From the NCBI RefSeq assembly GCF_032062105.1, contig NW_026930434.1:62001-126000 (forward strand): DNA of 64,000 bases, read 5' to 3'. Below the pieces are notes generated by a model. It made no database searches. It saw only the letters and a program-made list of their open reading frames with translations, and was not told where the DNA came from. The DNA comes from Saccostrea cucullata. Taxonomy: Eukaryota. Positions 1,410 through 4,400 of the stretch are shown here, piece by piece (positions within the stretch are counted from its first letter, which is position 1; each line of letters opens with the position of its first letter). Both the position numbers and the translations under genes were made by a program.

Positions 1410-4400
1410 AAAGGCCAGCCCTTTTGTATTTATTTTGTCTTGTCATGCTAAATGCTAATGACTGCCACCCTAATCAGGAGTTGACCACCAAAATTTCCAT
1501 GCCAAATATGTGGTAAAGCCTGTAAATGGTCTAAAGATGTACACTCCATAGCATGTAACAACTGCGAATTATGGTTCCACAGGAAATGTCTTAACATGAA
1601 CACCTGTATTTATGAAGCTTTTAGTAAAACAGACGTAAGTTGGTACTGTTGCCAATGTGGGCTCCCAAATTTCAACACTAGCCTCTTCGAGGACATAGAT
1701 TTTGCCAGCATGGAAAATAGCTGTGGCTTTGCCGTCACACTCATCACATATTTCCATAGCCTCTGACTTTGACCCTGACACAGTTGGACCACCCCAACAC
1801 ACGTCATCACCACAAGCTTCTAACAGAGCCATCAAGCACGACTTTGACAAAAGAAAGTTGTGCGTCATAGTCATCAACTTCCAAAGCATTAAAGCCAAAA
1901 AAGAGTCTCTTTGGAATCTACTATCGGATACTGATCCTGACATCATCATCGCCACAGAGACCTGGTTACACGAGGGAATTATGGAAAAGGAAGTTCTCCC
2001 GGATAATTACCAGTTCCTTGCCAGGAAGGATAAATTTAGGCGACCCACATGGAGGTGTATATCATAGCCAAATCCAACATTGCTGGGGTCCAGGTAATAC
2101 AGATACCACCATTTGAATTTACAGCAGCTGCGATCACCTGTAAGCACAGTAAAGACCCATTGATCATTGGTTCAATTTACCGGCCACCAAGCAGTAAGAT
2201 GGAATACATAGAGGAATTGTGTTCAGCTGTCAAGAACCTTGCCAGGAAATATCAAGGTTCAGTCATATGGATTGGAGGCGATGCCAACCTTTACGATATC
2301 GACTGGAAGTCTTCCAGCACTTCTACCCAACATAACCCAGCAGGTATCAACACCACCTTTATCAACACTGTGTTTGACATTGGAGGCGAAATGGTAGACT
2401 TTCCTACCAGAGGTACCAACACCTTAGACGTCTTCATCACAAATCGCCCCTCCTTATTAAACAGGTGCATACCTTGCCCGGGCCTTAGTGACCATGACAT
2501 GATCATGATCGACACAAACATAGTGCCTTCCAGACAGAAACCGGTCAGACGCCTCATCCACTTATGGAAGAAAGCAAACACAACGAAGATGGCAGAAGAC
2601 CTTGACAGCGACCTGGCACACCTCCTTGATGGCTCTACACATGACACCCCCATAAATGACCTTTGGATCACCTTCAAGACAGTCTGCCTCAACACCATCA
2701 GGAAGCATTTTACCAACCAAGTGTGACTTCAAGGTAGATTTAACCAGCCATGGTGTAACAGAAAGATCAAGCATCTGTCAAGACGAAAACGAAGAGCTTA
2801 CAACACATATAAAAGATCAGGCAAGGATAAGGATCGACAGAGATACAGGCGTGAAAATCAACCCAACATGAATGCAAAAGTGCCTATAACTCGTACGTAT
2901 CAGACATGGTGCAAGAGGATTCCAACAGTAAGAAACTACTCCTTCATTAAGGGTAAGAAGTGTGACAGTGCTGGGATCGCTCCACTGCCTCTCTATCGGA
3001 AACCTTCATGGAGATCCACAAACTAAAGCCTCTCTCCTGAACCAACAAGAGTCAGTGTTCACCACAGAGGATACATCCAATATTCCATCCCTAGGCACTG
3101 TTCCACCCCATCGGCACCTGACATTAGAGTCACAGAGAAGGGCGTAGTGGCCGACACACCTGCAAGGACTCAACCCCATAAGGCGACTGGACCGGATGAG
3201 ATCTCCACTAATTTCTAAAAGAGATGGCTCACCCTGTTACACCAGCACTCACCAAGATTTTTAGGCATCCATTGACCAAGGTCAAACACACTGAGGACTT
3301 TCAACAAAAGAGAAAGGTGGCCTATATTGCAAGAAGGGTGATAAAAGCAAGCCTGCAAACTATCGTCCTGTGTCCCTGACCTCTGTGTGTTGCAAGGTAA
3401 TAGAGCACATCATCCACAGCCACCTGATGAATTTCTTCGAGCATCACAGTATCCTAACCGACTACCAGCATGGGTTCAGGAAGAAGCGATCCTGTGAGTC
3501 CCAACTAATAACAACAATCCAGGACCTCGCTATGAGTTTGAAAACAACACCCAGGTCGATGCAGTGCTACTGGACTTTTCCAAAGCATTTGACAAGGTCC
3601 CACATGAGAGATTGCTAGCCAAACTAGACCACTACGGGGTACAAGGCAGCCTACTCAATTGGATTAGGAGTTTCTTGTCCGGACGAACACAAAAGGTATT
3701 GGTCGAGGGCCATTTTTCACCAACCGCACCGGTAACATCTGGAGTGAAAAAAGGAACAGTCCTCGGCCCACTGCTATTCCTGACATACATAAATGATTTA
3801 CCCTCCAGAGTGAGGTCCAAGGCCAGGTTATTCGCGGACGACTGCCTTCTGTATAGGACCATCACTACAGAGGCGGATACCAGACAACTCCAGACGGACC
3901 TTGACAACCTCCAAGATTGGGAAACAAACTGGCTAATGCATTTCAACCCAGACAAGTGTGAGGTTATCCGTATCACCACCAAACGGAAGCAACGCATAAC
4001 CCCATATTACATCCATGGGAAGGAGCTAGCCACTACCACCAAGGCCAAGTACCTAGGGGTCAACATCTCCAACAACCTATAGTGGAACCATCATATTGAT
4101 AGTGTATGTAAGAAGGCAAACAACACCACTGCCTTCTTAAGGAGGAACCTCTAGTCCTGTCCCAGCAACATCAAGGACAAGTGTTACAAGACATTTTTTA
4201 GACCCCAGGTAATATGCATCCACTGTCTGGGACCCTCACACAAAGAAAAACATCGAAAAACTAGAAGCTGTGCAAAGAAGGGCAGCTAGGTTCGTGACCA
4301 ATAACTACAACACCACCAGTAGTGTCACAACGATGATCGACAGGCTAGAATGGGAAAGTCTACAACAACGCAGAATTAAAGCAAAGGCTATTATGATGTA

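What the first reader, a model, noticed from the sequence alone, without database searches (positions are those of the whole stretch)
2700..3760. The LINE is a mosaic carrying exact patches of the unique sequence ~3.2-3.4 kb downstream; probably a collapsed heterozygous insertion
Seen: where the LINE ORF breaks or loses conserved residues, it matches the RHNO1 exon/3' region in colinear order. CTGCCTCTCTATC 2985-2997 = 6220-6232 (offset 3235); TAGTGGCCGACACACCTG 3145-3162 = 6352-6369 (18 bp, offset 3207); ACAAAAGAGAAAGGTGGCC 3304-3322 = 6530-6548 (19 bp, offset 3226); TTTTACC..AAGTGTG..TTCAAGG ~2707-2734 resembles ~5957-5994; TGAAAAAAGG 3745-3754 = 7128-7137 (offset 3383). The last patch turns the conserved RT motif GVPQG into GVKKG. 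The offsets approximate the LINE's own length. Inference: reads from a haplotype lacking the LINE were forced across it during consensus calling. The real element may then be a young, polymorphic and possibly intact insertion, with artefactual frameshifts. A biological alternative (template switching or patchy gene conversion from the host transcript) would be highly unusual.
Basis: partly seen in the sequence, partly recalled or inferred. Interest (0 to 1): 0.8.

Follow-up and report, generated by a model that had tools for sequence, protein, structure and literature searches.

The report
Assembly-made mosaic in an oyster LINE
One copy of a young jumping gene (LINE) in the hooded oyster genome carries short exact pieces of the neighbouring RHNO1-like gene, most likely because the assembly software blended two unrelated stretches of sequence, not because of anything that happened in the animal.

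Summary
The LINE at about 1296-4757 shares 13-, 18- and 19-bp exact matches, in the same order, with unique sequence 3207-3235 bp downstream. That downstream sequence is the last exon and 3'UTR of a RHINO/RHNO1-like gene.

None of 16 other copies of this LINE in the same genome has these patches. They carry the normal RT motifs there.

The gene is the donor. The Saccostrea echinata orthologue has the same gene sequences and no LINE.

The window copy has 70 private substitutions and 49 private indel columns. Its near-identical siblings have 1-3 substitutions and 0-2 indel columns, and two of the three checked keep a full-length ORF. In 2700-3760 all 46 private bases equal the downstream base in one colinear alignment (decoys 29 +/- 3). 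Family and gene letters alternate every 1-20 bp.

This pattern fits a consensus built over two superposed sequences. The likeliest source is reads from a haplotype without the LINE.

It is not proven. The public runs gave only short contigs, no empty-site haplotig exists in the assembly, and nothing shows that the insertion is heterozygous.

Biological interest is low. It is mainly an assembly-quality warning.

The parts
1296..4757 (+). LINE copy with a PHD-like finger, an APE-type endonuclease and a reverse transcriptase, ending in a (GAA)n-like tail. Its ORF is broken into more than 10 pieces. The 5' boundary is uncertain (1283-1300).
   Evidence: Pfam RVT_1 and Exo_endo_phos_2 on window ORFs. 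The intact sibling L003 has PHD, Exo_endo_phos and RVT_1. Homology to six full-length copies ends at these coordinates. ORF fragments are listed.
1310..1330 (+). Private cluster at the 5' junction. TTATGAAT (1310-1317) equals 4764-4771 and TAATTTTCAT (1321-1330) equals 4773-4782, just past the LINE's 3' end (offsets 3454 and 3452). The 10-mer is in every family copy and only the 8-mer is private. This is weak evidence, and a target-site duplication or microhomology is an alternative reading.
2707..2735 (+). Weak patch. The private changes make ATTTTACC (equal to 5956-5963). AAGTGTG and TTCAAGG are chance similarities present in the whole family.
   Evidence: (Smith-Waterman score 10 against control maximum 11)
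2985..2997 (+). Patch of 13 bp identical to 6220-6232. Other copies differ at 7 of these positions.
   Evidence: score 13; family version 5; control maximum 10
3145..3162 (+). Patch of 18 bp identical to 6352-6369. It brings in a TAG stop and 4 extra bases.
   Evidence: score 18; family version 7; control maximum 9
3286..3333 (+). Patch of about 48-55 bp with a 19-bp exact core (3304-3322 = 6530-6548). Family and gene letters alternate within it. It replaces the W-K-x-A-N-V-x-P-I-F-K-K-G region of the RT.
   Evidence: score 27; family version 8; control maximum 11
3745..3754 (+). TGAAAAAAGG equals 7128-7137. It turns GVPQG into GVKKG. It is not significant alone.
5159..5323 (+). Coding exon 1 of the RHINO/RHNO1-like gene (55 codons). 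It lies about 400 bp downstream of the LINE's 3' end, in the same orientation.
   Evidence: Its translation equals the start of P0001, LOC134228551 of Saccostrea cucullata. Weak RHINO Pfam match.
5727..6434 (+). Coding exon 2 of the RHINO/RHNO1-like gene (235 codons plus the stop). It holds the donor sequences 5956-5994, 6220-6232 and 6352-6369.
   Evidence: (PF15319, 30.5 bits). Run X1 contigs match 6051-6313 with no differences. Conserved in S. echinata.
6510..6560 (+). Donor of the largest patch, in the gene's 3'UTR.
   Evidence: (X1 contig 6314-6616)

Best explanation
The mosaic is most likely an assembly consensus artefact. At some consensus or polishing step, reads carrying the sequence that truly lies 3.2-3.45 kb downstream were laid in 1:1 register over the LINE. 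The likeliest reads are ones that lack all or part of the LINE, that is, the other haplotype of a heterozygous insertion. Wherever those reads outvoted the LINE reads, the consensus took their letters. This gave short gene-derived patches, single gene-derived bases and many frameshifting indels.

Shown: the patches are private to this copy, the gene is their donor, and family and gene letters are mixed column by column. Inferred: that this happened in the computer rather than in the animal, and that the source was a LINE-free haplotype. I give about 0.8 to an artefact of any source and about 0.5 to the empty-site haplotype as that source.

The underlying element is a real, species-specific insertion of a recently active LINE family, about 400 bp upstream of the RHNO1-like gene.
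For: 1. None of 16 other copies has the patches. Their RT motifs are normal there.
2. The gene-side sequences are ancestral. The S. echinata orthologue has them (17 of 18 bases for patch 2) and has no LINE. Contigs of run X1, which match the gene exactly over 6051-6313 and so appear to be the same species, confirm them.
3. The patches match this species' own gene version exactly, so the transfer is extremely recent or not biological.
4. In 2700-3760 all 46 private bases equal the downstream base in one colinear alignment (decoys 29.1 +/- 2.8, maximum 37). The 19 private bases outside the three strong patches score 19 of 19 (decoys 12.8 +/- 1.9, maximum 18, n = 150).
5. Within 3286-3333 the source switches between family and gene every 1-20 bp, including a single inserted G. 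A pileup or graph consensus gives this. A recombination tract does not.
6. Each patch replaces a LINE stretch of nearly the same length, and the spacing between patches is kept 1:1 (160 against 132 bp, 159 against 178 bp). The offset is close to the element's length.
7. The window copy has 70 private substitutions and 49 private indel columns. Siblings that are 99.7-99.8% alike have 1-3 and 0-2, and two of the three checked carry an intact 1150- or 1163-aa ORF.
8. The unique gene sequence next door shows no indels against X1 contigs, so the damage is local to the LINE.
Against: There is no read-level evidence. Both read tools returned only Logan contigs. They came from one low-coverage run that appears to be the same species (possibly RNA) and from runs that look like related species (about 95% identity on the gene).

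No empty-site haplotig is in the assembly, so heterozygosity is unproven.

The superposition signal is absent in 1340-2000, where a simple left-anchored empty-site model predicts it to be strongest.

The private clusters at 1476-1483 and 1728-1730, the 12-bp deletion at 4672 and the stops at 4081 and 4153 are not explained by the downstream sequence.

Only 1 of 17 copies shows the effect, and I could not test whether the assembly has other such cases. The assembly method is unknown.
Confidence: 0.8

Rival explanations
1. It is an artefact, but not from a LINE-free haplotype. One or a few chimeric or mis-recruited reads, a gap-filling step, or reads of an allele with a deletion of about 3.3 kb (from LINE position about 2000 to intron 1 at about 5340) were blended into the consensus. 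In that case the insertion need not be polymorphic. This rival is a sub-case of the 0.8 given to an artefact of any source.
For: The signal starts at about 2000-2030, with offset 3338 (the 9-mer ATAAATTTA, 2030-2038 = 5368-5376). It runs to about 3760. It is absent in 1340-2000 and in 3761-4757. No empty-site haplotig exists.
Against: The 5' junction cluster has a private 8-mer equal to the sequence just past the LINE's 3' end (offset 3454), which fits an empty-site read. Oysters are known for high heterozygosity and presence/absence variants (general knowledge, not tested here).
Confidence: 0.3
2. It is a real in vivo chimera. Short tracts of the RHNO1-like gene or its mRNA were copied into this LINE by repeated microhomology-mediated template switching (during reverse transcription, replication or repair) or by patchy ectopic gene conversion.
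For: Each strong patch is bounded by 3-7 bp shared between the family LINE and the gene, such as TAG...CCTG and AACAC...CAAG. All strong donors lie within the transcribed last exon and 3'UTR. No read evidence excludes it.
Against: It would need at least 4-10 separate switch-and-return events, each landing back in register and replacing an equal length. Donor and acceptor share no homology to align them. Family and gene letters alternate at 1-20 bp scale, including single bases. The same copy carries about 25 further frameshifting indels, which is unlike a natural young copy. Identity to the present-day allele is 100%.
Confidence: 0.06
3. It is chance similarity, or sequence intrinsic to the LINE family.
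For: The 13-mer and the 10-mer alone are within the control range. AAGTGTG, TTCAAGG and TAATTTTCAT are family-intrinsic chance matches.
Against: The 18- and 19-mers exceed all controls and are colinear with the others. Clean family copies share at most 12 bp with the downstream stretch. The patches are absent from all other copies.
Confidence: 0.005

Closest known systems
Mosaic or chimeric consensus at heterozygous structural variants in collapsed diploid long-read assemblies (from my own knowledge; no paper was read for this)
   Same: It is confined to one locus, it is rich in indels, letters from two sources are mixed column by column, the offset is close to the insertion length, and the organism belongs to a group known for high heterozygosity.
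   Different: Usual descriptions concern haplotype switches between homologous alleles. Here two non-homologous sequences were superposed, which left recognisable exact 13-19-mers of a neighbouring gene inside a transposon. The responsible software step is unknown.
Non-LTR retrotransposon (LINE) with APE-type endonuclease and RT, here with an N-terminal PHD-like finger
   Same: The domain set, the (GAA)n-like 3' tail, copies truncated at the 5' end, and many near-identical copies with intact ORFs.
   Different: The window copy is broken at more than 25 places. The LINE clade was not determined. The PHD match is below Pfam's cut-off (17.8 against 24 bits).
Templated insertions and template-switch mutation clusters (polymerase-theta end joining, MMBIR/FoSTeS, LINE RT template switching)
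   Same: Short tracts copied from sequence a few kb away, with microhomology at the tract ends.
   Different: Those mechanisms give one or a few contiguous tracts at a break. They do not give a colinear series of equal-length replacements in constant register, with single-base interleaving, across more than 1 kb.

Membership tests
Consensus superposition artefact (collapsed heterozygous insertion) | The aberrant letters are private to this copy and absent from other copies of the repeat | tested here: met
   16 other copies lack all the patches.
Consensus superposition artefact (collapsed heterozygous insertion) | The aberrant letters equal those of a second sequence laid colinearly at 1:1 scale, at an offset near the insertion length | tested here: met
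   46 of 46 private bases in 2700-3760 are explained, against 29.1 +/- 2.8 in decoys. Offsets are 3207-3454 against an element of about 3460 bp.
Consensus superposition artefact (collapsed heterozygous insertion) | The signal starts at the insertion junction and is strongest near it | tested here: not met
   There is no enrichment in 1300-2000 (13 of 22 against 12.5 in decoys). The signal spans about 2000-3760. Only a weak private 8-mer lies at the junction.
Consensus superposition artefact (collapsed heterozygous insertion) | Two classes of raw reads exist (with a clean LINE, and without the LINE), and no single molecule carries the patches | not testable with these tools
   Only Logan contigs were available, from one low-coverage run that appears to be the same species and from runs that look like related species. 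Both read tools are at their cap.
Consensus superposition artefact (collapsed heterozygous insertion) | A local excess of indels compared with sibling copies and with the flanking unique sequence | tested here: met
   49 private indel columns against 0-2 in L003, L004 and L006. The gene region has no gaps against X1 contigs.
LINE (non-LTR retrotransposon) | An APE-type endonuclease and a reverse transcriptase in one ORF | tested here: met
   Pfam matches on window fragments and on the intact sibling L003.
LINE (non-LTR retrotransposon) | A target-site duplication flanking the copy | tested here: inconclusive
   There are two candidates. GATTCATG (about 1285-1292) resembles GATTTATG (4761-4768). 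TTATGAAT..TAATTTTCAT (1310-1330) resembles 4764-4782. Neither is clean.
RHINO / RHNO1 (PF15319) | Match to the Pfam RHINO model above its gathering score | tested here: met
   Exon 2 ORF scores 30.5 bits against a cut-off of 25. Homologues P0001-P0006 carry PF15319.
In vivo gene conversion or templated repair | Contiguous conversion tracts between sequences that share homology | tested here: not met
   Non-private positions match the donor no better than decoys (0.639 against 0.621). The tracts are interleaved at 1-20 bp scale.

The most novel reading that the evidence does not exclude
The mosaic exists in the animal's DNA. A recently inserted LINE would then have been rewritten at several points by short templated copying from the host RHNO1-like gene or transcript 3.2 kb away. 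That would be an undescribed multi-patch template-switching or conversion process between non-homologous neighbours.
Probability: 0.06. Interest if true: 0.8.

Novelty: not a real feature. Interest (0 to 1): 0.15.

Why it matters
If the artefact reading holds, the biology is ordinary. A young LINE sits about 400 bp upstream of the oyster's RHNO1-like gene, and the mosaic is a product of assembly.

The practical value is as a warning. In this Saccostrea cucullata assembly, a repeat copy that looks decayed or chimeric may be a damaged consensus. This would bias estimates of transposon age, intactness and host-transposon chimeras.

The signature found here could be used to screen assemblies for collapsed structural variants. 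It consists of private clusters that match sequence at an offset close to the element's length.

If the mosaic were real (about 6%), it would point to an unknown mutational process.

Tried and rejected
1. Read evidence. The look-up of sequencing runs gave 9 runs, all with a share of 0.19 or less. Read laying on 1200-7199 with four of them returned only Logan contigs. X1 matches the gene exactly over 6051-6313, so it appears to be the same species. It has low coverage and is probably RNA: one contig starts exactly at the exon 2 boundary (5726) and has 58 further letters that do not lie there. X2, X5 and X6 look like related species. No contig bridges the insertion site and none carries a patch. 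At the patches that are covered, the LINE contigs show the family letters. This is uninformative for this locus, because other copies supply those contigs.

2. Empty-site haplotig. Both flanks are single-copy in the assembly.

3. Genome-wide search for other cases of superposed downstream sequence. A scan of the 64-kb window found only tandem-repeat arrays besides this case.

4. Protein search with the chimeric 51-aa ORF (3224-3376). There was no candidate, which is uninformative.

5. Superposition by reads anchored on the right flank, which would put upstream flank sequence on the LINE's 3' end. By eye, the LINE's 3' end (about 4620-4757) shows no convincing match to the upstream flank at the expected offset.

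6. Other sources for the unexplained private clusters (1476-1483, 1728-1730, 2060, 4196-4211, 4672). No match longer than 12 bp exists anywhere in the window.

7. A continuous diagonal from the 5' junction. The sum of match lengths was 88 against 57.7 +/- 12, but I chose the band after seeing the data, and the stricter test for 1300-2000 is negative.

8. A paper describing the assembly method. None was found.

9. An exact look-up of P0001 in other assemblies. None is on record.

Copies were only compared.

Full report
**What is there**

The window lies in contig C12571 of a 1.17-Gb, 23,869-contig assembly. The species is Saccostrea cucullata. The RefSeq protein LOC134228551 (P0001, 290 aa) equals the translation of 5159-5323 followed by that of 5727-6431. 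It matches Pfam RHINO (PF15319, 30.5 bits against a cut-off of 25).

Upstream, at about 1296-4757, lies a LINE in the same orientation. It has an APE-type endonuclease and a reverse transcriptase. Its intact sibling L003 also shows a weak PHD match. The window copy's ORF is in more than ten pieces.

**Checking the observation**

All the reported exact matches are at the stated coordinates:
- 13 bp, 2985-2997 = 6220-6232
- 18 bp, 3145-3162 = 6352-6369
- 19 bp, 3304-3322 = 6530-6548
- 10 bp, 3745-3754 = 7128-7137

The third match is the core of a gapped match of about 55 bp (3286-3333 against 6510-6560).

The LINE against twelve other 4.2-kb segments of the window gives at most 16 bp on the plus strand and 13 bp on the reverse strand. 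Clean family copies against the same downstream stretch give at most 12 bp. The 18- and 19-mers are therefore far beyond chance. The 13-mer and the 10-mer count only through their colinearity.

**Are the patches part of the LINE family?**

No. The genome holds at least 16 other copies that cover this stretch. In an alignment, the window copy differs from all of them in discrete clusters, and the largest clusters are exactly the patches. At those places the other copies encode the usual RT motifs: GVPQG where the window has GVKKG, and the W-K-x-A-N-V-x-P-I-F-K-K-G block where the window has the 19-mer.

Local alignment of each cluster to the downstream region scores 13, 18 and 27 for the window version. 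The family version scores 5, 7 and 8, and the control maxima are 9-11.

**Which side is the donor?**

The gene. The orthologous locus of S. echinata (L038) has no LINE. There, 1345 bp separate the blocks that are 4082 bp apart in the window. Its gene carries the same sequences, for example TAGTGGCTGACACACCTG, which is 17 of 18 bases for patch 2.

Contigs of run X1 match 6051-6313 with no differences and also cover 6314-6616. That exact match suggests X1 is the same species. The LINE patches match this species' gene version exactly.

**How abnormal is this copy?**

Among seven aligned full-length copies, the window copy has 70 private substitutions and 49 private indel columns, and 90 of these sites lie in clusters. 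L003, L004 and L006 are 99.7-99.8% identical to each other and have 1-3 private substitutions and 0-2 private indel columns. L003 and L006 keep ORFs of 1150 and 1163 aa.

Outside the clusters the window copy differs from these siblings by only about 20 isolated substitutions, mostly transitions. So this is a young copy with about 25 frameshifting indels, which is not how natural decay looks. By contrast, the neighbouring gene shows no indels against the X1 contigs.

**The mixture test**

I aligned 2700-3760 globally to 5950-7140 and asked whether each private window base equals the aligned downstream base.
- All 46 private bases do. In 150 decoy segments the mean is 29.1 +/- 2.8 and the maximum is 37.
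- The 19 private bases outside the three strong patches score 19 of 19. Decoys give 12.8 +/- 1.9 with a maximum of 18.
- Non-private positions match no better than in decoys (0.639 against 0.621), so the two sequences are not homologous.

Within 3286-3333 the source alternates between family and gene every 1-20 bp, down to a single inserted G. Each patch replaces a stretch of nearly equal length, and the spacing between patches is kept (160 against 132 bp, and 159 against 178 bp).

This is what a column-wise or graph consensus gives when two unrelated sequences are laid over each other. A recombination or template-switch tract does not look like this.

**Extent of the signal**

The signal is clear in 2700-3760 and modest in 2000-2699 (14 of 16 against 9.7 +/- 2.0; 4 of 150 decoys reach it). 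It is absent in 1300-2000 and in 3761-4757.

At the 5' junction a private 8-mer (1310-1317) equals the sequence just past the LINE's 3' end, at offset 3454. The adjacent 10-mer is family-intrinsic, so a target-site duplication or microhomology reading is also possible.

From there the best small matches fall along a drifting diagonal: offset 3338 at position 2030, 3249 at 2707, and 3207-3235 at 2985-3330. I chose that band after seeing the data.

The private clusters at 1476-1483 and 1728-1730, the 12-bp deletion at 4672 and the stop codons at 4081 and 4153 remain unexplained.

**Interpretation**

The best reading is that reads carrying the downstream sequence were superposed on the LINE during consensus or polishing. 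Oysters are known for high heterozygosity (general knowledge, not tested here).

The missing signal just inside the 5' junction leaves room for other sources. These include chimeric or mis-recruited reads, a gap-filling step, or an allele with a breakpoint near 2000 and 5340.

I give about 0.8 to 'artefact of some kind', about 0.5 to the empty-site haplotype as its source, and about 0.06 to a real in vivo mosaic. A real mosaic would need many switch-and-return events in perfect register between sequences that share no homology.

**What could not be done**

- Both read tools returned only Logan contigs. They came from one low-coverage run that appears to be the same species and is probably RNA, and from runs that look like related species.
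- The assembly has no second copy of either flank.
- The chimeric ORF is in no protein collection.
- No paper on the assembly method was found.

The verdict therefore rests on the internal structure of the sequence and on comparison with other copies and with a sister species. It does not rest on single molecules. Copies were only compared.

**Verdict**

The mosaic is probably not a real feature, and its biological interest is low.

Noticed in passing
window 5159-5323 and 5727-6434: RHINO/RHNO1-like gene (LOC134228551, 290 aa, two coding exons) in a bivalve. Homologues carrying PF15319 occur in S. echinata (89% identity) and in Mytilus (28-33%). X1 contigs start exactly at the exon 2 boundary, which suggests the gene is expressed and spliced. 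The LINE's 3' end lies only about 400 bp upstream of the start codon.
   Followed up: partly
L003:39-3491 and L006:39-3530: Sibling LINE copies that are 99.7-99.8% identical and carry intact 1150- and 1163-aa ORFs (PHD-like finger, endonuclease, RT). This is a recently active family. Related contigs are abundant in the runs that look like two related species.
   Followed up: partly
window 7150-7965: Tandem array of units of about 145 bp (5.8 copies, 73% matches). Contig depth is extreme in all four runs (up to 3 x 10^5). The same repeat flanks the S. echinata orthologue, on both sides and in inverted orientation downstream of the gene (L038 615-1302 and 12122-12815).
   Followed up: partly
window 6858-7070 (minus strand): 70-aa ORF (GRPKTTWRRTVEKELKE...) that looks like the C-terminal tail of another retroelement. 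It has high copy depth in all runs and no Pfam match. Contigs of other runs often skip about 6753-7150, so this block varies between copies or species.
   Followed up: no
window 2764-2777 = 13121-13134; 3939-3954 = 18638-18653: Exact matches of 14 and 16 bp between the LINE and distant parts of the window. The 16-mer encodes the conserved FNPDK region, so it is probably another LINE fragment. The 14-mer includes the private base at 2774. The offsets are unrelated to the main finding.
   Followed up: no
window 1476-1483, 1728-1730, 4081, 4153, 4672: Private clusters, two private stop codons and a 12-bp deletion in the LINE. Neither the downstream sequence nor anything else in the window explains them.
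   Followed up: partly
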